Positions 5,208 to 62,366 of a stretch of DNA of 64,000 nt are shown here, piece after piece. Positions within the stretch are counted from its first letter, which is position 1. Each line of letters starts with the position of its first letter. The translations under genes were made by a program, and so were the position numbers. The stretch covers positions 248,001 to 312,000 of the forward strand of contig NIVC01001827.1 in NCBI GenBank assembly GCA_002269645.1. The letters are read 5' to 3'. The notes beneath the pieces were generated by a model, which was not told the DNA's origin, searched no databases, and worked only from the letters and a program-made list of their open reading frames with translations. This DNA is from Macrostomum lignano. Taxonomy: Eukaryota.

Positions 5208-29439
<24,232 letters not shown>

Positions 29440-50800: not shown

Positions 50801-52055
50801 AGAGCCTGTCACACCTGTCTATACAGACACGCCTTATCATAAGGCACTATTCCACAATCCTGAGCAGTTCTGTCTAACCCATTACCCATTCTCAGAGCTG
50901 GTCAGCCGGCCCGATCCATCTGATGACTGGCGCACCATTGGTGACGAGAGCGCTCGCCACCTATTTCTAATCGAACTGCTGAAAGGTATGGGCATCACAA
51001 TGGCTAAAGTGTTCCAGGAGCCGGCTACTATCAATTACCCATTTGAAAAGGGTCCACTGAGTCCGCGCTTCCGCGGCGAGCACGCCCTGCGCCGTTATCC
51101 CAGCGGCGAGGAGCGCTGCATCGCTTGCAAACTGTGCGAAGCCATCTGCCCTGCCCAGGCCATCACCATTGAGGCTGAGGAGCGCGAGGACGGCTCCAGG
51201 CGGACCACTCGCTACGATATTGACATGACCAAGTGCATCTATTGCGGCTTCTGTCAGGAGGCCTGTCCAGTTGATGCCATCGTTGAAGTGAGTGTCCTTT
51301 CACTCCTAGCTGCTAAGTTAGGTCTAAATAGAAATAAGATCTCTTATGTAACATTTCTCTATTCGTCCAACCTTTAAGATATACACTTTAAAATGCTTAT
51401 AAGCTTCTCTGTTACAATATTTAGGCTCGGTCAACCCGTTCTATGCTTGGGGTGTGTAGTATTGCTTTTATCAGCTGAGTTGATTGTTACGCCAACCAAG
51501 TTGAGAATTCCAATTTAGCAGCAGTAGATTTGGTCTTGCCCATAGGCATATATAGAAAAAAGACAAGCAAGTTGATAATTCTCATCTTTACTGCGTGGAA
51601 GTCGATGTTTAAGCATGGTTTCAGTGCTGGAATCCTTTTCATTGCTGATGTCTATGGCCTAGCGGAATGGGCGACGCTCGCCTCCCCGCTGCGTCTTCGG
51701 ACCGCCCTGCAGCTAAAGATGTCTATGGCCGAAATATCAACTTGGTTTGCCTTTTTCCGTCTATGTCTATGGGCAAGATCAACTCTACCGCTGCGTAATG
51801 GGAATTCTCTGTTCGATTTTGGCCATAGACAACTGAATAGTCCTATGAATGCTTGTTGGTTTTAAATCCAGCATCGATCTGTCTGTAGTTCTGTGCTCTA
51901 TCGATGTTAATAAATTTTTTCAGGGCCCGAACTTTGAGTACTCCACAGAGACGCACGAGGAGCTGCTCTACAACAAGGAGAAATTATTGGCTAATGGCGA
52001 CCGCTGGGAGGCTGAAATAGCTGCTAATCTCAAAGCTGAGCACTATTACCGCTGA
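47869..52055 (+). CDS. NDUFS8: NADH:ubiquinone oxidoreductase iron-sulfur subunit 8 (TYKY), mitochondrial
   Basis: Exons 47869-47914, 49829-49882, 50896-51287 and 51924-52055 (GT-AG, phases 1/1/0). Two 4Fe-4S motifs, [12 protein letters not shown] and [12 protein letters not shown], and C-terminus [22 protein letters not shown]. The two small 5' exons give a presequence-like N-terminus ending ATYK. Confidence 0.97.
50400..50820. repeat. Degenerate minisatellite of about 28 bp (AATTCCAATCCAAAGCCTGTCACACCTGCCC) in NDUFS8 intron 2
   Basis: Direct inspection; explains the spurious N-terminus of ORF 50502. Confidence 0.9.
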
Positions 52056-53268
52056 CAGAGCTGTCTCCGCAATCATTTAAGGCTATTAACTGTGTTCTGT
52101 CGCCATCAATTCTCCCTAGAAATCCCTCCCAGATCCCACCACAGACCGACCAGCATGGCTAGAATAGTTTCAAAATGTTTTCCATCGCCCCAAGATACCT
52201 GTCATGAATGTCTGTCTACATGCGTGTAAACTAATGCCCAGATTATATATGATATACTACTTACTGTACTACTGGTGTTACTCGTGCACTCGTCTATCTG
52301 ATTGCCCTGAACCATTTATAGTGTGGATAGTAGACTATCAGTGTAGAAATTATATCGAACTAAGAGAGTGAAATAGATGGGGTCGTTTTGCACACCTCTT
52401 CTCAGTTTCTGTCTCGCATTGTTTAAAGCTTAAATTATTTCAAGTGTTAAAATGTCTAATTATTTTCGGCTGCTAAATACTTTTAATGAGAATTGTCTGC
52501 CTTCTTAATTCTTGGAGGTGCAACCGAGTGAAATTTGATGTTCGAGTGTGAAATTACTTTTTAAATGTTGCCATAAATCAGGGCATTTCTTGGCCTCGGC
52601 CAAGAAATGAATAAATGACCTAGAGTCGAATTCGGTAGTCTATAGTAGAGAACAGAGAATAAAGAAGAGAAGAGAGTAAGGCGAGGATTAGATCGAAGAA
52701 AGAAAGAATTCGGAGAGACGACAAATTTCATATACGATATACCAGTGCTTGCAAAAGACGTGCGCGACCCGTCTGCATGAGGCGGAGGTGCAGAGAGCGC
52801 TGATATTTGTCGAGTTACTGGCCACAGCAGCTCAGCCGTTGAGCGTTACATCGGAGTTTCTGTGGAACAAGGTTTACTACAGACTTCATCAGTTCGGCCA
52901 GACCAGCTGTGCCCGCCAAGTCTCTCCCCATGCACACAGCTGACACTCCGTGTGTTGAGCAGCCATCTGGCCAAAATTGCGCATCGAAATTTGCGGTGAG
53001 ATACACAAACAAGATTTGACTGACATTTTTCGATTACACTAAACTAACTAATCGATGCTGACGGACGTGCATCCTGCTATTGGTTGGACTTTTACCGTAC
53101 ACAGTACAGTACGTGGGCAAGATAAACTCTGCAACGTTTTTAATTGGTCGAGCCATTTATTTGGCAGGCACGGCCAGATAAATTAACCATAGACTGCAAA
53201 TTGCCTGGTTATTTCATTTCCTCGTCTATGGTGAATAAGAATTTTGCTGGACTCTTTGCAACGAATCA

Positions 53269-54191
53269 ACTATACCTTTTCAACTTCGGATTCGTCAAAA
53301 GTGAGTTCAAATTCGTCAGCGTATGCAAAACTATCTAGCGCTCCAGGGGAAGAGAGTGAGTGTCTATGGTAAATTTTTAGAGAAAGTGACTTCGAATTCG
53401 TCTGAGTAAGTGAAATTCGCCAGTGCAAATACAGCCTGACCATAAAAAGTGTCTGCTTTGTCCATGGTAAGAAAAGAAGTTGTCTATGGTAAATTTAGGT
53501 AAGAAAGTGAGTGCAAAGTTCGTCTGTGGATCGCTCTAGACTCGTGCGATGTTTTCAACAAGGACGAGACTGGAGACAACTCGCAATTGAACTGGATATC
53601 AAGAGGACAACTGCCAGTGACATCATCAGGAGATATGTTGATGAGGGTAGGATTGATCTTAACGTGCGTGGAGGTGCAGTGAGACCAAAGTTTTCTGAGG
53701 AGATGCTCGGGGCGTTGACGAGGTATGTGGAAGAGAAGCCGACTGTGACCCTCAAAGAAATGCAGCAAAAGCTTGTTGCAGATTTTCCTGCTGCTCCTGC
53801 TGTGACAACGCAGGCAATCAGTCGTCGGCTTGACGGGACTTTGTGTGTTACATTGGCTGTTTGTTGCCATGTAGGGCATCTCTGACAAATCAAAGCATGA
53901 AATGAAGATTTCAGGAAATTGGGCTACTTTTCCACAGACGAAATTCACTCACTTTCTTACTTAAATTTACCATAGACAACTTCTTTTCTTACCATGGACA
54001 AAGCAGACACTTTTTATGGTCAGGCTGTATTTGCACTGACGAATTTCACTTACTTGGACGAATTCGAAGTCAATTTCTCTAAAAATTTACCATTAGACAC
54101 TCATTCTCTTCCCTTTGAGCGCTATATAGTTTTGCATACGCTGACGAATTTGAACTCACTTTTGACGAATCCGAAGTTGAAAAGGTATAGT
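53269..54191 (+). mobile_element. Tc1/mariner-IS630-like DNA transposon deletion derivative with about 260-bp TIRs, retaining only the HTH DNA-binding region
   Basis: Near-perfect IR arms 53269-53530 / 53931-54191 with TA at the ends. The central ORF 53511-53885 encodes a tandem HTH (RDWRQLAIELDIKRTTASDIIRRY...RGG...PTVTLKEMQQKL...TTQAISRRL). No DDE/D domain. Confidence 0.85.
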
Positions 54192-54440
54192 AGGAAGCAA
54201 AAGGATATACCAGGTATTAAAAAACAAAGCCAACCTACTATAAGGTTCGAGAAGTTCCATCAGATTCTTCGGGTTCCCCAAATTACTGCTTAAATTGTCT
54301 ATGGTACTCGGGCACTTGATATAAAATACCCAATTCTTGAGCGACAAAAATCCCTCCTTACATTCGGGCTCTGTTGATCCGAAGTTGAATTTAGAACAAG
54401 TTAAATTAGCATCAGGTCTACTAAAAGCAGAACCGAGCAC

Positions 54441-56432
54441 ATGGCCTGGATATCTTACGGTGGCCGCAGTGGCGCGACCATTCTCGATAAACGTCGCAGC
54501 CGCTACGCCGACAACGCTTCCAACAGCGACGACGGAGGTGCCGTTGGATCTGACGATCCGCCGCGTTACAAAGGCGTCCCATTGTGCGGCGCCGGCCTCT
54601 GCTCGGGCCCCGGCCTGCCGCCGAAGCGGCTGCCCCGGCCGGGCATCGACTGCGTCAACGGTGACCGGCCCTGTCTGCCCTGCGACATCGTCAACGTGCG
54701 CCTACGTGTGGCCGTCGCCGGCTCCAAGGTGAAGCGGGCGGTGGCCGAGTGTCAAAGGCGCTACTTCTGCCGAGTGTGGAACCTGCTGTTCGCCTACCTG
54801 TTCCCTGGCGAGCACCGCGATGGCCCGTGCAATCCTCGAGTCGTGAGGCCCAACGATCCCATGCCCGTTTGCCGTGGCCAGCCGCAAAATAGTCAATGGC
54901 GGCAGAGACAAAAGTGAGCGTTTCTTACATTTCTGGGGCCGAAAAATCGCTGTTGGAAAGTTGATTTCCCGCCTTTCTACTGTCAAAGTTTCAATCTCGT
55001 TCGCTTCGACATCAAAACTTGGCAGTTCAGTTGCGAATGTTGATTATACTTGCTCGTCTAATACTCGTCAAAACTCGATTACAAACGAGCAACGAGCACT
55101 TGCTCAGCCCTGGTGCCCACTAGTAGTAGCTCGGCTCTGCTTTGAATTTTCCCGTATTGCACTAGGGAAATTCCTTAAACTTCTGGTTAGTAACAAAGTG
55201 GCAGTTTTCCCAGTTTCCAGGAATTAATAAATAGGGTGAGAGGGAAACTTGCATTCATAATTGTCAGACAGGACGAGTTAAATGCTATTGAATAGCTTTG
55301 AATACCTGCCGGTGTTGTGAGAGGCTTCGCATGGCTTTTGTAGAAATATTTGCTAAATTGGACTTACCTAATCTTGAATAAGTCTTAATGTCTCTATCGG
55401 AGATGAGATTAGTAAATTTATTTAAACCTTAAGGCACGGGTCGGAAAACTCAGCTCTCTTCTCTATTTTCTCTCCCCTCCCCTCTCATCTCATCTATCAT
55501 CTCCTTGTTCCTCTTCTCTTTCCTCCTTAATCTATCAAAAACAATTTGCAGACTTCTGGCTCGGGTTCTGTTCCCGAGGTTGCTTTAATGCGGCATGCAC
55601 AAGCGGAATTCGATCGGGTTTCGGCTAAATTTAAAGGGTCGCCATCATAAACCCGAAAAATCACAACTCCGAAAGCACTTCCAATCATAAACCCGAAATA
55701 TCATAACTCCGAAAACCTAAATAGTGTTGGACATTGCTAGAACTTTCGGAGTTATGATATTTCAGGTTTGTGATATTTCGGGTTTGTGATATTTTGGGTT
55801 TGTGATATTTCGGGTTTATGATATTTCGGGTTTAAGATGGAAAGCGCTTTTCGGAGTTGTAATTTTTTGGGTTTGTGATGCCCCCATTGTTGGCCTAGCT
55901 GAAACTACAGCTGATTATCATTATCATCGGTCATCATATAAAAGTGTTTTACCTTTGGTCGATCGAAACTTCCGAAAGATACTAAATTAGGTCCATAGGC
56001 CCCCCAACAGTCTCAACACTGTGCAAGTGTATTCTAATCATTTCTCAGTGTCAAATTGAATCCCGCCTTGCTATGTTTATTTGCAGGCAGAGCCAGCCCA
56101 GGCCTGTCTGGGAGCGAGCGCTCAGCCCAGTTGAGGACATGAAGATGACGGACCATCGGGTGCGCAGACGCCTGCCAGACGAGCAGAAGCAACCGCCTGC
56201 CAGCACGCCGCCGCCACCGCCGCCGCCGCCGCCGCCGACAGCTAAGAAGCGACCAGCAGTTCAGACGCGCCGACAGGCCGGCAACCTGCGGTATAACCTG
56301 GTTGACAGGCCCTACCTGACTGGTGACAGCCTCAAGAGTCACCAGATTCGCGGCGCCACGCCAGCGCGGAATGGACAGTTGCGAGGCAATTTCTACGACC
56401 TGCCGGCAATGGATTCTGAGAAGAGAGCCTGA
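54441..56432 (+). CDS. Uncharacterised protein, two coding exons, containing a PCLPCDIV...AECxxRYFxRVWxLLFAxLFP domain (paralogue A)
   Basis: ORF 54441-54913 ends in a phase-2 donor (aa|gtgagc) that joins in frame to the acceptor ttgcag|g at 56087 (poly-Pro exon to the stop at 56432). The domain is conserved at amino-acid level with the ORF at 60.1 kb. The true start may lie further upstream. Confidence 0.65.
55636..55885. mobile_element. Foldback-type MITE with subterminal tandem repeats, in the intron of paralogue A
   Basis: Left arm with CATAAACCCGAAA/CAACTCCGAAA units, inverted against right-arm TTTCGGGTTTGTG/TTTCGGAGTTG units. Confidence 0.7.
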
Positions 56433-57139
56433 TTTCTTGAGGAAACAGCGGCTCAACTGCAATTTTAAAATACGTGCAGGTTTAGACTGACTGCATATGC
56501 GCTCATCTGTATCATAATGTAATTTCTCTAAAGCTTTATAACGCATATGATTTGTTTAGTACACAAGTGTTCATTTTAGTGCTAACGCTTCTATATTTTG
56601 TTCCTATGTTAAAAAAGATGACTAGCTCTGTACTACTGCAGCTCATTAAGTAGTTGATACAACTTGCTTTTTATTTTATTGGGCAAATTTAATACACCTT
56701 TGTCACTTGTACATCACTTTTTGTATTGTTTTAGTTGTGTCGGCAACTTCAAATTTCAAATTATACATAAACTGAGCTCTTAAAAATAGTTGCTATGCCC
56801 TCTCTGCATACTGCATGTAAGAATCTTTGTGTTTAGCGCCTCGTTTTGTCCACACTTTAGTCTGTGGCTAATTGTAATTATACTTTTACCCAGACGCAAT
56901 GAAAAAATATTTTGGCCATTATTCCACAGTTTTGATGTGTACCATAGACATTTGGATTGAAAAAATCCATTGCTCAGTATTTTTGTTAATAAATACAGAA
57001 CAACAAGAAGTAAATGAACAAAAAGGAAAACTCATTAAAACTAAAGTACCAGCTACACGAAAAGAGTTATTAATAAATGTTACAGCTAGTGCAGTTTATC
57101 AGTTTGTAGTCGAAATTTGACAATGTGAAAATCAATTTG

Positions 57140-57662
57140 TCACCCAAAGTGAAACATGCAGTTCTCAAAGCCGCAGTTTCTAAAGATGCTCGACACTTTA
57201 GCCTGATGATTTGGCACTGCAAAAGGAGTTGGTCTATGTTGAATGTTTTCTATGAAAGAGAAATACAGGTGCTCAAGTATAGTTGCCGAACTTACCATTT
57301 GAAAGATGCACGTCTTGGTTAAGTTGGCATGCGACTGATGAGCTTCGTCTGATGAGCTTCTTTGGTACCGCAGTATCCAAACTGGGATTCTTTGGGACTG
57401 TCGGCTGCTCGACTGAATCGATTGGCCACTTTCAGGCATCGTTTATAGCCGTCGAGGCGTTGAAGACTGCATGGTCGCGTTTTCTTCCTAGGTAGCGCCG
57501 CACGGTTCGTTCAGTCGTCGACAGGAAGATTTTTTCAATTAATAAGCGCGGCTGTTTGACGAGATGCACTATAGCCATAGTAGTTTGACAAGACAAATAG
57601 CTTTTTCTCCCACTACTCGCTTTCCTGATTTCTTGCAAGACGCAAGCAAAATCAGCACTCAT
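57140..57662 (-). pseudogene. C-terminal-only paralogue of the tyrosine recombinase (degenerate, one frameshift near 57435)
   Basis: Reads ...KSYLSCQTTMAIVHL...TERTVRRYLGRKRD...STAIND, then in the next frame ...SSIFRNCGFENCMFHFG*. This is collinear with KQYTNHCIRVTRIADL...SESTVRRYLARKRD...TAVSD...MFANCLFDGCTFKF* of the 58201 ORF. Confidence 0.75.
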
Positions 57663-58200
57663 CACAGTGTTGTCTATGGTCAAACTAAGCCACACAACTC
57701 AGTTGTCTATGGGTAAAACAACTCTTAAAACAGCCAATTGAAGCATGATAAAAAGTGTGGAATAATGACAGCGACAAAAGTGTGGAATAATGGCCGCAAA
57801 AGTGTGGAATAATGGTAGATTAAGTCTATGGTTTCAGACTTGGATAATGATCACAGTCACGAGTGGCGAAGCCACGAGTGACTGCTGATCATTATTTAAT
57901 TCTGAAACCATAGACATAATCGCATTATCATATAGACTAGCGTTTTCGGTTGATCATTATGTAACGCCATTAAGCCACGCCATTAAGTAACGCTGCAGTG
58001 TCTTCGTGCCATAGATATTGGCTCGGCAGTGAGCAGGGACAAGGGAGCGCAGCTCCCTTGCGGGGGTGTGGGGGCAGAGCCCCACTAATTGGACCATAGA
58101 CAATTTTTTAGAATACAGTTCTCTAAAAGAAAAGCTCGACCATGAAGTCTGTTAGGAAGTTAAGAACTAGAAGCAAGAAGCGAGAGAAATCGAATTAAAA

Positions 58201-59550
58201 ATGCCTCTTATCAACTGGAAAAACCTACCGGTCGACAGTTTAGATGGCGTCTCGTCTACTGAACTAGATTTTCTGAGTGAACTGAGCGCCGTGAACCACA
58301 GTTCCGATGAAATTCTTGGAGATTTTATCGACTACCTGACTAAAATCGAGACGGCTGATGAGGCCGCTGCGGTTTCTAGTGTCGAGCTTCCAGAACTATC
58401 TGATTTACCCAGTGCGATGGATGTTGCCGAACTGGAATCACTGCCGAGCACTACACGAGAACACATGTTTCTGTATGGCAAAATGTTCGTGGAGTTTTTG
58501 AAGAAACATGGTGCTGTGGATGTAAGCGTGATCAGTGACAGTCGCTTGGCCGAATTTTTAAGGTTCTTTTACTTCTGTCTAAAAAAATCTGACGGCAGTT
58601 GCTATTCGCCAGCTACGTTGGTCTGCATTCGTGCTGGAGTGCAGAGGTACTTGACTCTCGTGCTGAAGCGTCGAACAAATATTATTTCCAGTGACGAGTT
58701 CGCCACTGCCAACCGGATGCTGCGAGTAAAGGTGCGGCATTTTCATGCTGATGGAGGCACTGTCAATCAGCACGAGCCAATAGAAGAAGGTGATTTACAG
58801 AAAATGCGTGCTTATTTTGACCGTTCTACAGCAGAACGGTTGCAAGATGAAGTACTATTTACGCTGCTGTATGTCCTGGGCGAGAGAGGTCAAGAACACC
58901 TGTCAAGTCTAAAGCAAGTTGGCACGCTCCAAGAAGAAGTCGACGCTGATGGGAATCCATATCTTGCGTTGCCGCCGTTAAAGACAAAAAACCAGACTAG
59001 CGATCCAACAAAATGCAAGGGAAATCAGCGCAAACAGAGTCGGATCTACGGCGCTCAGCGGGAGTTGATCCTGCATCATCAGAGTTTGTTACCGCAGAAT
59101 TCGTCCTCGTTCTTTCCGCGCCCTCTGACTAACAATTCGGGAGGACAAATTCGATTCTCTGCTACGCAAGTGCGCGGTGTCAATTGGTTGGCTGCATTCA
59201 TGAAGCACGTTAGTAGTGTGTGCAACCTCTCCAAGCAGTACACGAATCACTGCATACGCGTCACGCGTATTGCGGATCTTTTCGACAAAGGAATGCCTAT
59301 GGGGGAGATAATGGCGGTAACGGGACAACGATCGGAGTCCACTGTTCGACGTTATCTCGCACGCAAGCGTGACAGAACCCTCAGGAAGGTTGCTACCGCT
59401 GTTAGTGACAATTTGGCCGCACCAACCGATGCGACTACGAGTGCAACCACTAGTGCAACAGTCATGCAGCAAGCTCAAGTTGACCTGCGAGGTGTGCAAC
59501 AGCCGATGTTTGCCAACTGCCTCTTCGATGGGTGCACGTTCAAATTCTAA
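58201..59550 (+). CDS. Tyrosine recombinase, Crypton/DUF3504 (KCTD1/ZMYM/QRICH1-related) type, 449 aa, intronless
   Basis: Motifs YSPATLVCIRAGVQRYL, GERGQE (catalytic R), KTKN (K), YTNHCIR (HxxR), TGQRS (H/W position is Q), VRRY (Y), and C-terminal MFANCLFDGCTFKF. Confidence 0.88.
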   Translation: MPLINWKNLPVDSLDGVSSTELDFLSELSAVNHSSDEILGDFIDYLTKIETADEAAAVSSVELPELSDLPSAMDVAELESLPSTTREHMFLYGKMFVEFLKKHGAVDVSVISDSRLAEFLRFFYFCLKKSDGSCYSPATLVCIRAGVQRYLTLVLKRRTNIISSDEFATANRMLRVKVRHFHADGGTVNQHEPIEEGDLQKMRAYFDRSTAERLQDEVLFTLLYVLGERGQEHLSSLKQVGTLQEEVDADGNPYLALPPLKTKNQTSDPTKCKGNQRKQSRIYGAQRELILHHQSLLPQNSSSFFPRPLTNNSGGQIRFSATQVRGVNWLAAFMKHVSSVCNLSKQYTNHCIRVTRIADLFDKGMPMGEIMAVTGQRSESTVRRYLARKRDRTLRKVATAVSDNLAAPTDATTSATTSATVMQQAQVDLRGVQQPMFANCLFDGCTFKF

Positions 59551-59923
59551 CAAAGAATATATAGCTCGTACTTATAAGTCTTAACTGTCGAAAATCAAAT
59601 ACTTTGGTATTCGTTTGCTTTGCTATATCCTCGGTCTGTTTCCTGTTAAAGTTCTTGTTGCTTAAATTAATAAAAACAGTGAATTTCTCGCTCATAATCT
59701 ATGGCAATTTATCGTGACTTAACATCTTCATTAAAAAATGCATTAAAAAACGATAGTCTATATGATAATGACTGAGCGCTGAGTGAAAGTATAAATACAA
59801 TGCACTTTTATAGTATGCAACTGAGTTGAATAATGGCCAAAACTCGAGTGCGCTACGCCTACCGCCTACCGGCGCTCGCCAGACAATCGTTGTCACGCAC
59901 TGGGACCGCTGATTATTTATCCA

Positions 59924-62097: not shown

Positions 62098-62302
62098 AGA
62101 TTAAACATGCCTTTTGAGGGAGTTATTTGTATAAATCACGAGGGCCTGAGGCCCGAGGGATTTATGAAAATAACTCCCGAAAAAGGCATGTGTAATCTCG
62201 TATAAACCATAGACATAAAGACTTTACGGGATATTTTTGAATATTACCAAATAAAATCCCGGAGAACGCAAATATTGTCACGGAAAGTCTTTATTTCTAT
62301 GG
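62098..62302. mobile_element. Non-coding hairpin element with CGAG-stem-loop-CGAG core followed by a short IR-bounded cassette
   Basis: Arms about 62098-62138 / 62158-62198 surround CGAGGGCCTGAGGCCCGAG. Then CCATAGACATAAAGACTTT (62207) / AAAGTCTTTATTTCTATGG (to 62302), 18/19 IR. Confidence 0.6.
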
Positions 62303-62366
62303 ATTATTGCTGCTATTCCCACCCGATTTACGGGGCTCAAATGTCACGGAAATCTTCAATCCTCAT

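What the first reader, a model, noticed from the sequence alone, without database searches (positions are those of the whole stretch)
56910..59842. Quasi-palindromic two-armed tyrosine-recombinase element: candidate undescribed Crypton-related system
Layout: IR-a' (56910-56933), short YR-C gene (-), three AAAAGTGTGGAATAATG repeats (IR-a, 19/20 match to IR-a'), central hairpin of about 90 bp (57824-57915), IR-b (57923-57946), full YR gene (+), IR-b' (59747-59770, 23/24), and an outer 14-bp IR closing the whole unit. Described Cryptons, as I recall them, are a YR ORF with short terminal direct repeats. Two divergent IR-bounded cassettes around a hairpin suggests multiple recombination sites able to invert or excise either arm, or a foldback ssDNA intermediate (inference).
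Basis: partly seen in the sequence, partly recalled or inferred. Interest (0 to 1): 0.85.

Follow-up and report, generated by a model that had tools for sequence, protein, structure and literature searches.

The report
Nested Crypton transposons with terminal hairpins
This is not one two-armed element but a young, intact tyrosine-recombinase (Crypton) transposon of the flatworm Macrostomum lignano inserted into the end of an old, broken relative, and the young copy shows that this branch of animal Cryptons, thought to have featureless ends, carries a conserved strand-specific DNA hairpin at one end that is probably its recombination site.

Summary
The "two-armed unit" is two nested transposons, not one element. 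A second genomic copy (99.4% identical) shares only window 57810-59769: hairpin, IR-b, YR gene and IR-b'. Both copies are flanked by TAAT. The left arm, the IR-a repeats and the "outer IR" belong to an older, internally deleted, stop-ridden relative with imperfect terminal inverted repeats of about 100 bp. The young element inserted into a TAAT in that relative's terminal repeat.

The protein is a CryptonA-type tyrosine recombinase with an intact R-K-H-R-Y set and a Cre-like predicted fold.

The unexpected part: when the young element is circularised, IR-b', the hairpin and IR-b form one palindrome of about 170 bp, with the crossover at its base. The same geometry recurs in four multi-copy metagenomic families that are only 25-32% identical in protein.

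These hairpins share strand-specific features although their stem sequences are unrelated. They carry tandem G·A mismatches in a 5'-YGAR-3' context ("CGAG blocks") and C-G(N)NA-G apexes, including the ultra-stable DNA mini-hairpin GCGAAGC.

This points to a folded-DNA recombination site, comparable to integron attC. That step is inferred, not shown. I found no description of it in the searchable literature.

The parts
57810..59769 (+). Young autonomous Crypton: 1,956 bp (57814-59769) plus the shared TAAT crossover core at 57810-57813. A second TAAT lies at 59766-59769.
   Evidence: This is the only stretch shared with the second genomic copy, L003 (NIVC01002014.1): 1,961 bp at 99.4% with unrelated flanks. 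There are 12 nucleotide differences and both ORFs are intact.
57818..57921 (+). Terminal 104-nt hairpin on the coding ('GA') strand. It has outer arms carrying GTCTATGG/CCATAGAC, one CGAG block (57860-57863 / 57875-57878) and the apex GCGAAGC (57866-57872).
   Evidence: (z = -10.8). The same architecture occurs in relatives.
57923..57946 (+). IR-b. It pairs with IR-b' and extends the hairpin stem when the element is circular.
   Evidence: 24 nt, 96%; fold of the circular junction, -59 kcal/mol.
58201..59550 (+). Tyrosine recombinase ORF, 449 aa. Catalytic residues are R229, K263, H350, R353, Q376 (H in most relatives) and Y385.
   Evidence: AlphaFold2 pLDDT is 81.7. The best Foldseek hit is Cre, E = 3.5e-9.
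58090..58104 (-). Copy of the ATTGTCTATGGTCCA motif about 100 bp upstream of the ATG. The old element has the same motif at the equivalent place.
   Evidence: (I9).
59747..59770 (+). IR-b', the 3' terminus of the young element. It ends in the TAAT crossover core.
56837..56934 (.). Left terminal inverted repeat of the old, non-autonomous Crypton relative. It contains IR-a' (56910-56934) and the 23-nt IR (56871-56893).
   Evidence: Alignment with the re-joined right end scores 52, against 21.4 +/- 3.7 for shuffles; (I3, I4, I8, I13).
57146..57546 (-). Remnants of the old element's YR ORF: residues 3-12 (LIN*KNLPVD), 378-416 and 436-449 in three different frames. Residues 13-377 are deleted.
   Evidence: tblastn; translations.
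57750..57813 (+). Three tandem AAAAGTGTGGAATAATG repeats, the inner part of the old element's right terminal repeat. The TAAT of the third copy is the young element's insertion site.
   Evidence: (D1, D2). The re-joined empty site ...GTGTGGAATAATGACTGAGCG resembles repeat copy 1 ...GTGTGGAATAATGACAGCGAC.
59770..59854 (.). Outer part of the old element's right terminal repeat, displaced by the insertion. It contains the 23-nt IR partner (59779-59801) and the 'outer IR' (59818-59842).

Best explanation
The locus holds two nested Crypton DNA transposons (YR-only, CryptonA type) of Macrostomum lignano.

SHOWN
- A 1,956-bp autonomous element (57814-59769) is recent and mobile.
- It sits in a TAAT inside the terminal repeat array of an older, oppositely oriented relative of about 1.06 kb (56837-57813 plus 59770-59854). 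That relative is internally deleted and has its own imperfect inverted termini of about 100 bp.
- On the strand carrying the G·A mismatches, the young element reads 5'-TAAT / short spacer / 104-nt hairpin / IR-b ... YR gene ... IR-b'-TAAT-3'.
- When its ends are joined, IR-b', the hairpin and IR-b make one continuous palindrome of about 170 bp. The crossover lies where the outer stem meets the hairpin.
- This geometry, tandem G·A mismatches in a 5'-YGAR-3' context, and C-G(N)NA-G apex loops recur on one defined strand in many distantly related elements. Their stem sequences are unrelated.

INFERRED
- The recombinase excises the element as a circle and integrates it by strand exchange across a 4-6 bp AT-rich microhomology (TAAT). 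It prefers the equivalent sites of resident relatives, which explains the nesting and the tandem arrays.
- The hairpin is the cis-acting recombination site. It is recognised in a folded form (an extruded cruciform or a single strand), much as integron attC is. I put this last step at about 0.5.
For: Organism and copy number
- P0001 of M. lignano is 99% identical.
- L003 shares only 57810-59769 at 99.4%.
- Both junctions carry TAAT. In the window the repeat is the 6-bp ATAATG.

Protein
- 5,086 relatives were found. Relatives pass the Pfam cut-offs for DUF3504, QRICH1 and Phage_integrase.
- R229, K263 and H350 are invariant across the 23 aligned sequences. R353 is kept in 22 (one gap) and Y385 in 20.
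- The fold matches Cre, IntI and XerH.

Old element
- tblastn detects the ORF remnants. They carry in-frame stops.
- The terminal repeat becomes mirrored once the insertion is removed.

Family-wide architecture
- 34 of 84 related loci have a palindrome of 60 bp or more within 700 bp of the YR. Density there is 0.3-0.5 per kb, against 0.02 per kb inside ORFs and 0.03 per kb in the window.
- In four families with several copies in different flanks, one terminus coincides with the outer edge of the palindrome. For three of them I folded the circularised junction. It adds a 12-20 nt outer stem, with the AT-rich crossover at an asymmetric internal loop.
- L006 shows the same split palindrome and ends in ...CATAATA.

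Strand-specific signature
- 30 of 40 2x2 internal loops are GA/GA or the complement TC/TC.
- 60 of 62 GA dinucleotides lie in a 5'-YGAR-3' context. 17 of 20 apexes are C-G(N)NA-G.
- Orientation correlates with position relative to the ORF: upstream 7 GA and 0 TC, downstream 1 GA and 15 TC, Fisher p = 3e-5.
- Published chemistry: GCGNAGC and GCGNNAGC are ultra-stable DNA mini-hairpins, much less stable as RNA, and occur at ssDNA replication initiation sites (PMC13037366). CGAG blocks are tandem sheared G:A pairs that stabilise DNA hairpins (PMC10085684).

Arrays
- L016 and L080 are head-to-tail arrays joined at the hairpin end.
Against: - Only two copies of the young element could be examined.
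- No empty site, circle junction or single-stranded form was observed.
- The window's own hairpin has only one CGAG block. Seven of 14 upstream palindromes in relatives have no GA/GA 2x2 loop, although most keep the G(N)NA apex.
- I found no classical pair of inverted recombinase-binding elements around TAAT. The flanking AGTCTAT(AT)G motifs are direct repeats.
- The hosts of the metagenomic relatives are unknown.
- The old element has no recognisable hairpin and its exact termini are uncertain.
- The strand-specific mismatches could also act as asymmetry marks in ordinary duplex DNA.
- Repbase and Dfam could not be consulted.
Confidence: 0.8

Rival explanations
1. One reading: one composite, quasi-palindromic two-armed element. 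Its IR-bounded arms invert or excise individually and it moves as a unit closed by the outer IR.
For: All IRs exist and the layout looks symmetrical. Both arms carry YR-related sequence in divergent orientation.
Against: - The second genomic copy contains the right arm only, with sharp TAAT junctions.
- The left-arm ORF is destroyed.
- The arms share no nucleotide similarity beyond short motifs.
- The outer IRs are out of mirror order until the insertion is removed.
Confidence: 0.04
2. The palindrome is an ordinary duplex-DNA site: a large lox-like array of symmetric recombinase or host-factor binding sites. The GA/GA positions merely break the symmetry to give the site a direction. No folding is involved.
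For: - Most tyrosine recombinases act on duplex sites with an asymmetric core.
- The fold is closest to Cre.
- The crossover is a short microhomology, as in classical Crypton models (PMC3212892).
Against: - An asymmetry mark need not always be GA in a 5'-YGAR-3' context, yet 60 of 62 are. Nor need it be paired with G(N)NA apex loops that match the consensus for exceptionally stable DNA mini-hairpins.
- Stem sequences are free to vary while pairing is kept.
Confidence: 0.22
3. The hairpin acts as RNA: a 5'-UTR structure that regulates the recombinase, or a small-RNA precursor.
For: - In the window and its closest group, the hairpin lies upstream of the ORF on the sense strand.
- There are weak miRNA-precursor matches, RF04089 at 29.5 bits and RF04174 at 39.6 bits.
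Against: - Both Rfam matches are far below their gathering scores of 62 and 140.
- In 15 of 16 downstream cases with tandem mismatches, the stabilised strand is antisense to the ORF.
- GCGNAGC-type loops are much more stable as DNA than as RNA.
- The hairpin coincides with element termini.
- The 1.8-kb contigs of the closest relatives, L001 and L002, which reach only about 70-80 nt upstream of the called ORF, carry no hairpin.
Confidence: 0.08
4. The hairpin is mainly a single-strand initiation signal: a priming site that converts a single-stranded circular intermediate into duplex DNA, as in ssDNA phages and rolling-circle plasmids. It would not be the recombination site itself.
For: - Mini-hairpin motifs are typical of ssDNA replication initiation sites (PMC13037366).
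- The features are strand-specific.
Against: - The element terminus and the crossover map to the base of the hairpin in five families, which ties it to recombination.
- No replication protein is encoded.
- The two roles are not mutually exclusive.
Confidence: 0.15
5. The young element is mobilised in trans by a DDE transposase, as MarCry is. One candidate is the Tc1-like family, whose terminal repeats share the GTTGTCTATGGTMAA motif.
For: The 15-mer motif occurs in a Tc1-like remnant at 53.2-54.3 kb and in both Crypton arms. A MarCry precedent exists (PMC3212892).
Against: - The two ends of the young element are not inverted repeats of each other.
- There is no TA duplication. The junctions show TAAT microhomology.
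- The YR ORF is intact and conserved.
Confidence: 0.03

Closest known systems
Crypton DNA transposons, CryptonA group (Goodwin 2003; Kojima & Jurka 2011, PMC3212892)
   Same: - A single ORF encoding a tyrosine recombinase with the R-H-R-Y set, related to DUF3504 and QRICH1.
- No reverse transcriptase and an animal host.
- Short (4-6 bp) direct repeats at the junctions that reflect microhomology with the target rather than a duplication.
- Internally deleted non-autonomous derivatives exist.
   Different: - Animal Cryptons were reported to have no terminal repeats of any kind, and Cryptons in general to lack conserved structural features.
- This element has a terminal hairpin of about 100 nt, with a 24-nt inverted repeat linking its base to the other terminus.
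- Platyhelminthes is not among the phyla listed in 2011.
Integron attC sites recombined by IntI (folded bottom strand; PMC2727003, PMC3458562; titles and abstracts seen)
   Same: - An imperfect palindrome whose structure, not sequence, is conserved.
- Strand-specific non-Watson-Crick features.
- Two stacked duplex boxes separated by an asymmetric unpaired spacer.
- A crossover at the base of the hairpin, so the integrated unit carries the hairpin at one end and a short complementary piece at the other.
- Arrays build up by insertion at resident sites.
- IntI is among the structural matches.
   Different: - Eukaryotic host, and the recombinase is carried by the mobile unit itself.
- The asymmetric features are tandem sheared G·A pairs and mini-hairpin apexes rather than extrahelical bases.
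- The hairpin is longer (90-215 nt).
- Single-stranded recombination is not demonstrated here.
CTXphi-type integration (XerCD acting on a folded ssDNA attP) and strand-biased circularising integrative elements of Vibrio (PMC9345347; abstract seen)
   Same: A tyrosine recombinase works with a folded or single-stranded form of the element. Tandem arrays form at the attachment site.
   Different: Those are bacterial. They use host Xer recombinases or several element-encoded recombinases. There is no sequence or architectural homology. This comparison rests on my own knowledge and on one abstract.
DIRS1-like retrotransposons
   Same: A YR-encoding eukaryotic element with inverted terminal repeats and an internal region complementary to the termini, which makes sense only in a circular form.
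   Different: DIRS elements encode reverse transcriptase, RNase H and often a methyltransferase, and are several kb long. The 1,956-bp unit here holds only the YR ORF.
DNA mini-hairpins GCGNAGC/GCGNNAGC and CGAG blocks (PMC13037366; PMC10085684)
   Same: The window's apex is exactly GCGAAGC. 9 of 20 family apexes fit the full consensus and 17 of 20 fit C-G(N)NA-G. The 2x2 loops are the published CGAG block.
   Different: These are known as physico-chemical motifs, at phage and plasmid ssDNA origins and in one human promoter. They are not known as parts of a eukaryotic transposon terminus.

Membership tests
Crypton (YR-only DNA transposon) | Encodes a tyrosine recombinase with the catalytic R...H-x-x-R...Y set | tested here: met
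   R229, K263, H350, R353 and Y385 are present. R229, K263 and H350 are kept in all 23 aligned sequences, R353 in 22 and Y385 in 20. The AlphaFold2 model matches Cre, IntI and XerH. The window protein's own Pfam hit to Phage_integrase is below the cut-off (E = 0.0065).
Crypton (YR-only DNA transposon) | No reverse transcriptase, RNase H or other transposase in the mobile unit | tested here: met
   The unit defined by two copies is 1,956 bp with one long ORF. Pfam shows no other domain.
Crypton (YR-only DNA transposon) | Short (4-6 bp) direct repeats at the termini that reflect microhomology with the target, not a target-site duplication | tested here: met
   TAAT lies at both junctions in both copies, and ATAATG in the window. 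ATTA/TAAT-type cores occur in metagenomic family A. No empty site was available to prove the absence of a duplication.
Crypton (YR-only DNA transposon) | No terminal inverted or long direct repeats (as described for animal Cryptons) | tested here: not met
   There is a 104-nt terminal hairpin plus the 24-nt IR-b/IR-b'. This is the respect in which it is a variant.
CryptonA subgroup | YR related to DUF3504 and QRICH1, no C-terminal GCR1_C domain, animal host | tested here: met
   Relatives at E = 1e-85 to 1e-50 pass the DUF3504, QRICH1 and Phage_integrase cut-offs. The host is M. lignano. No phylogeny with reference CryptonA or CryptonI sequences was made.
DIRS/Ngaro/PAT YR retrotransposons | Reverse transcriptase and RNase H alongside the YR | tested here: not met
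   Neither is present in the unit.
Folded-DNA YR sites (integron attC type): works-like comparison only | Structure conserved without sequence conservation, strand-specific non-canonical features, and a crossover at the hairpin base | tested here: met
Folded-DNA YR sites (integron attC type): works-like comparison only | Recombination uses one folded single strand, with replicative resolution | not testable with these tools
   This needs biochemistry or strand-specific detection of intermediates.
TIR/DDE transposons and MITEs (Tc1/mariner) | Matching terminal inverted repeats at both ends, plus a TA duplication | tested here: not met
   The young element's ends are not inverted copies of each other. 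The junctions show TAAT microhomology.
Protelomerase / hairpin-telomere systems | Cleavage and rejoining at the centre of the palindrome | tested here: not met
   Termini map to the base of the palindrome, not its centre, in five families.
miRNA precursor families (Rfam) | Score at or above the family gathering threshold | tested here: not met
   RF04089 scores 29.5 against a threshold of 62. RF04174 scores 39.6 against 140.

The most novel reading that the evidence does not exclude
A large clade of animal Cryptons transposes through a strand-specific folded-DNA attachment site. This is a hairpin stabilised by CGAG blocks and a mini-hairpin apex, with the crossover at an asymmetric loop at its base. 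Integration would then proceed as at integron attC or CTXphi attP, by single-strand exchange followed by replication. It would be the first structure-specific tyrosine-recombinase system in eukaryotes. Recombination between the inverted IR-b and IR-b' cores could also flip the gene body relative to the hairpin, which would explain the two orientations seen among families.
Probability: 0.3. Interest if true: 0.9.

Novelty: new variant of a known kind. Interest (0 to 1): 0.68.

Why it matters
Cryptons are the least understood class of eukaryotic DNA transposons. Since 2003 their mechanism has rested on analogy, and they are hard to annotate because their ends are said to be featureless.

A conserved terminal hairpin with defined polarity, a defined crossover position and a recognisable signature would help in three ways:
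- It gives a structural hallmark for finding autonomous and miniature Cryptons in genomes.
- It turns the mechanism into a set of simple experiments: hairpin mutants, top against bottom strand, circle detection.
- If the folded-DNA reading holds, it extends structure-specific YR recombination, so far known only from bacteria, to animals. It would also offer a compact recombinase and site pair as a possible tool.

The domesticated Crypton recombinases (ZMYM2-4, QRICH1, KCTD1) descend from this group. Their ancestral DNA-structure preference may therefore be informative.

Tried and rejected
- Word-indexed protein searches returned only 6 and 11 relatives because of the candidate cap. The exhaustive profile search was needed.
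- The viral contig scan found nothing.
- The window's own protein is not in the contig index. The M. lignano paralogues P0004-P0006 have no contigs. No further M. lignano copies, empty sites or circle junctions could therefore be retrieved.
- L001 and L002, the closest relatives at 50-51% identity, are 1.8-kb contigs with only 70-80 nt upstream of the called ORF. They show no hairpin, so they are uninformative about architecture. L001 does carry GTCTATGG on both sides of the ORF.
- I looked for a classical core site (inverted 11-13 bp arms around TAAT) at the circular junction and did not find one. The flanking AGTCTAT(AT)G motifs are direct repeats.
- I looked for a hairpin in the old element after removing the insertion and found none.
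- Rfam gave only sub-threshold miRNA matches.
- I considered a protelomerase-like reading and rejected it, because the termini are at the base of the palindrome and not at its centre.
- I considered mobilisation by the neighbouring Tc1-like family and rejected it: there is no TA duplication and the ends do not match.
- Literature searches for Crypton with palindrome, hairpin, or subterminal inverted repeats found no description of this architecture. Repbase and Dfam could not be searched.
Full report
**1. Observation**

The region was read directly and scanned for repeats. All the features in the finding exist.
- IR-b/IR-b' is 57923-57946 and 59747-59770 (24 nt, 96%).
- IR-a' (56914-56934) pairs with three tandem AAAAGTGTGGAATAATG copies at 57751-57819 (90-95%).
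- The central hairpin is 57818-57921, with 36-nt arms at 89% and an inner palindromic apex.
- The outer IR is 56910-56927 / 59825-59842 (18 nt, 94%).

Folded as DNA, the hairpin gives -39.8 kcal/mol, z = -10.8. Only two palindromes of 60 bp or more exist in the 64-kb window. The long ORF is 58201-59550, 449 aa.

**2. Organism and protein**

The ORF is 99% identical to a hypothetical protein of Macrostomum lignano, and 48-52% identical to four paralogues or relatives. Its own Pfam matches are sub-threshold: Phage_integrase E = 0.0065 and QRICH1 E = 0.014.

An exhaustive profile search finds 5,086 relatives. Relatives at E = 1e-85 to 1e-50 pass the Pfam cut-offs for DUF3504, QRICH1 and Phage_integrase. 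DUF3504 is the domain that Kojima & Jurka traced to animal Crypton recombinases (PMC3212892).

Among 23 aligned sequences, R229, K263 and H350 are kept in all, R353 in 22 and Y385 in 20. Position 376 is Q here and H in most relatives. The AlphaFold2 model has a mean pLDDT of 81.7. Its best PDB matches are Cre (E = 3.5e-9), the integron integrase, XerH, XerA and the Tn1549 integrase. This is a catalytically plausible CryptonA-type tyrosine recombinase.

**3. The two arms are two elements**

The contig that encodes the 99%-identical protein (L003, NIVC01002014.1) matches the window only over 57810-59769: 1,961 bp at 99.4%. The flanks are unrelated on both sides.

| Copy | Left junction | Right junction |
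|---|---|---|
| Window | ...GGAA-TAAT-GGTAGATT... | ...TATGA-TAAT-GACTG... |
| L003 | ...AAGT-TAAT-GGTAGATT... | ...TATGA-TAAT-TTAGT... |

The mobile unit is therefore 1,956 bp plus a TAAT shared with the target. This is the short direct repeat or microhomology expected of Cryptons. The two copies differ at 12 positions, three of them amino-acid changes, and both ORFs are open. The family has been active recently.

The left arm is different DNA. tblastn finds only residues 3-12, 378-416 and 436-449 of a related recombinase, on the minus strand, in three frames and with in-frame stops. It is an internally deleted, dead relative.

Removing the 1,956-bp insertion rejoins ...GTGTGGAATAAT|GACTGAGCG.... 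This resembles the first tandem repeat copy (...GTGTGGAATAATGACAGCGAC). It also brings the 23-nt IR and the 'outer IR' into mirror order with IR-a'. The result is an imperfect terminal inverted repeat of about 100 bp, 56837-56934 against 57797-57813+59770-59854 (score 52 against 21.4 +/- 3.7 for shuffles).

The 'outer closure' and IR-a thus belong to the old element. The hairpin and IR-b/b' belong to the young one. The insertion site (GGAATAATG) resembles the young element's own terminus (TGATAATG). The simplest reading is recombination between the incoming element's site and the equivalent site of a resident relative (inference).

**4. Architecture of the young element, and its conservation**

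When the ends are joined, IR-b' (24 nt), a 3-nt bulge, the 104-nt hairpin and IR-b (24 nt) fold into one structure of -59 kcal/mol. TAAT lies at the inner end of the outer stem.

I fetched contigs for distant relatives and 80 metagenomic loci at 25-32% protein identity.
- Long palindromes (60-234 nt) lie within 700 bp of the recombinase gene in 34 of 84 loci. Density there is 0.3-0.5 per kb, against 0.02 per kb inside ORFs.
- L006 reproduces the window's layout: hairpin at positions 1-95, inverted repeat 100-123 / 1774-1797, and a contig ending in ...CATAATA.
- Four families are present as several near-identical copies in different flanks. They are A: L040/42/44/45/47; B: L048/53/60; C: L078-82; E: L033/34/61. 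In each, the shared segment ends at the outer edge of the palindrome.
- For A, B and C, circularising the unit defined by the copies extends the palindrome by a 12-20 nt outer stem formed with the opposite terminus. The AT-rich junction sits in an asymmetric internal loop. In family A the core is ATTA, which is TAAT on the other strand.
- L016 and L080 are head-to-tail arrays joined at the hairpin end. These parallel the nesting seen in the window.

**5. Strand-specific signature**

Stem sequences differ completely between families, but the imperfections do not.
- Of 40 symmetric 2x2 internal loops in 33 non-redundant palindromes, 13 are GA/GA and 17 are TC/TC, the same loop read on the other strand. 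Palindromes in these loci that do not lie next to a recombinase gene lack them, apart from L081 2410-2588.
- After orienting to the GA strand, 60 of 62 GA dinucleotides sit in a 5'-YGAR-3' context, and 38 of them are CGAG.
- The innermost loop lies 4-9 nt from the apex-closing pair. The next loop lies mostly 19-26 nt further out.
- 17 of 20 family apexes are C-G(N)NA-G, and 9 fit GCGN(N)AGC. The window's apex is GCGAAGC itself (57866-57872), flanked by one CGAG block (57860-57863 / 57875-57878).

Published chemistry matches these motifs. GCGNAGC and GCGNNAGC are extraordinarily stable DNA mini-hairpins closed by a sheared G·A pair. They are much less stable as RNA and recur at ssDNA replication initiation sites (PMC13037366). 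CGAG/CGAG is the 'CGAG block' of tandem sheared G:A pairs that stabilises DNA hairpins (PMC10085684).

On the complementary strand the same positions would be pyrimidine-pyrimidine mismatches. The signature is therefore meaningful only for one strand in a folded state.

Orientation is also systematic. Palindromes upstream of the ORF carry GA/GA on the coding strand (7 against 0). Those about 260-550 bp downstream carry TC/TC (15 against 1; Fisher p = 3e-5, with some redundancy among copies). Read on the GA strand, every family has the same cis layout, 5'-core-hairpin-b...body...b'-core-3'. Only the gene's orientation within the body differs.

**6. Mechanism**

Shown:
- The mobile unit and its termini.
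- The microhomology.
- The nesting.
- The conserved split palindrome.
- The strand-specific stabilising motifs.

Inferred:
- Excision to a circle and integration by the encoded recombinase across TAAT. This is the standard Crypton model (Goodwin's, as summarised in PMC3212892).
- The hairpin with its outer stem is the attachment site and is recognised in folded form. The outer stem and the hairpin base would then act as two stacked binding duplexes around an asymmetric spacer. This resembles the R and L boxes and unpaired central spacer of integron attC (my own knowledge, plus the abstracts seen).

I put the folded-site step at about 0.5. A single-stranded intermediate specifically I put at about 0.3.

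The rivals are:
- A purely duplex site with GA as an asymmetry mark.
- An ssDNA priming signal.
- An RNA-level role. This is disfavoured by the antisense configuration and the DNA-type loops; the Rfam matches are sub-threshold.
- Mobilisation in trans by a DDE transposase. This is disfavoured by the junctions.

**7. Comparison and novelty**

By protein, gene content and junctions this is a Crypton of the CryptonA type.

It departs from the published description. Animal Cryptons were reported to have no terminal repeats, direct or inverted. [quoted passage not shown]

My searches found no description of a Crypton hairpin. Repbase and Dfam entries and subscription-only papers could not be checked, so prior cataloguing cannot be excluded.

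I therefore classify it as a new variant of a known kind. The two-armed reading is wrong, but the locus leads to a family-wide feature that looks new and can be tested.

**8. Limits**

- Only two copies of the young element were available.
- There is no empty site, and no evidence for circles or single-stranded DNA.
- The hosts of the metagenomic relatives are unknown.
- The ends of the old element are approximate.
- The window's hairpin has a single CGAG block.
- Half of the upstream palindromes keep only the apex motif.

Noticed in passing
window 62098-62307: This is the only other long palindrome in the window. It is a 101-nt hairpin with two CGAG blocks (62098-62198), followed at once by a 37-nt inverted repeat (62202-62238 / 62271-62307). 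It shares AGATTAA at the hairpin start and AACCATAGACATAA just after the hairpin (within the hairpin's 3' arm in the young Crypton). No recombinase gene is nearby. It looks like a miniature non-autonomous Crypton derivative of about 210 bp that keeps only the cis module.
   Followed up: partly
window 21426-22141: A 39-bp tandem satellite of about 19 units. Its unit contains GTTGTCTATGGTCAAAC, identical over 17 nt to 57669-57685 in the old Crypton arm. The 8-mer CCATAGAC occurs 32 times in the window against 1.5 expected. The satellite may derive from Crypton subterminal repeats, or the motif may bind a common factor.
   Followed up: partly
window 53187-54304: An internally deleted element with long inverted termini. 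Each terminus carries several GTTGTCTATGGTAAA-type repeats. It encloses an ORF (53511-53885) with a paired-like HTH domain typical of Tc1/mariner transposases: HTH_23 E = 6e-7 and PAX E = 9e-5. Why it shares the 15-mer motif with the Cryptons is unexplained.
   Followed up: partly
window 51503-51834: A cluster of four CCATAGAC/GTCTATGG motifs inside a 79-nt inverted repeat (51503-51581 / 51731-51809, 81%), plus shorter IRs. It is possibly another small non-autonomous element of the same motif family.
   Followed up: no
L016 43-2264; L080 1-70 and 2104-2308: In metagenomic relatives, two related Cryptons lie head to tail and are joined at the hairpin end. In L016 the hairpin modules are 90.8% identical while the ORFs are only 64% identical. 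This suggests that integration into resident attachment sites is common in the family.
   Followed up: partly
L038 versus L039 and L041: Copies of one metagenomic family differ in whether they have the palindrome. Homology with L038 stops at the start of its palindrome in L039 (L038 position 2072) and inside it in L041 (position 2135). This may reflect hairpin loss, an assembly break at the palindrome, or an alternative recombination product.
   Followed up: no
window 56160-56235: A GC-rich (CCG/CGC)n low-complexity tract lies just upstream of the old element. It reads as poly-Pro or poly-Arg in overlapping ORFs on both strands. It is probably part of a neighbouring gene or a simple repeat.
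   Followed up: no
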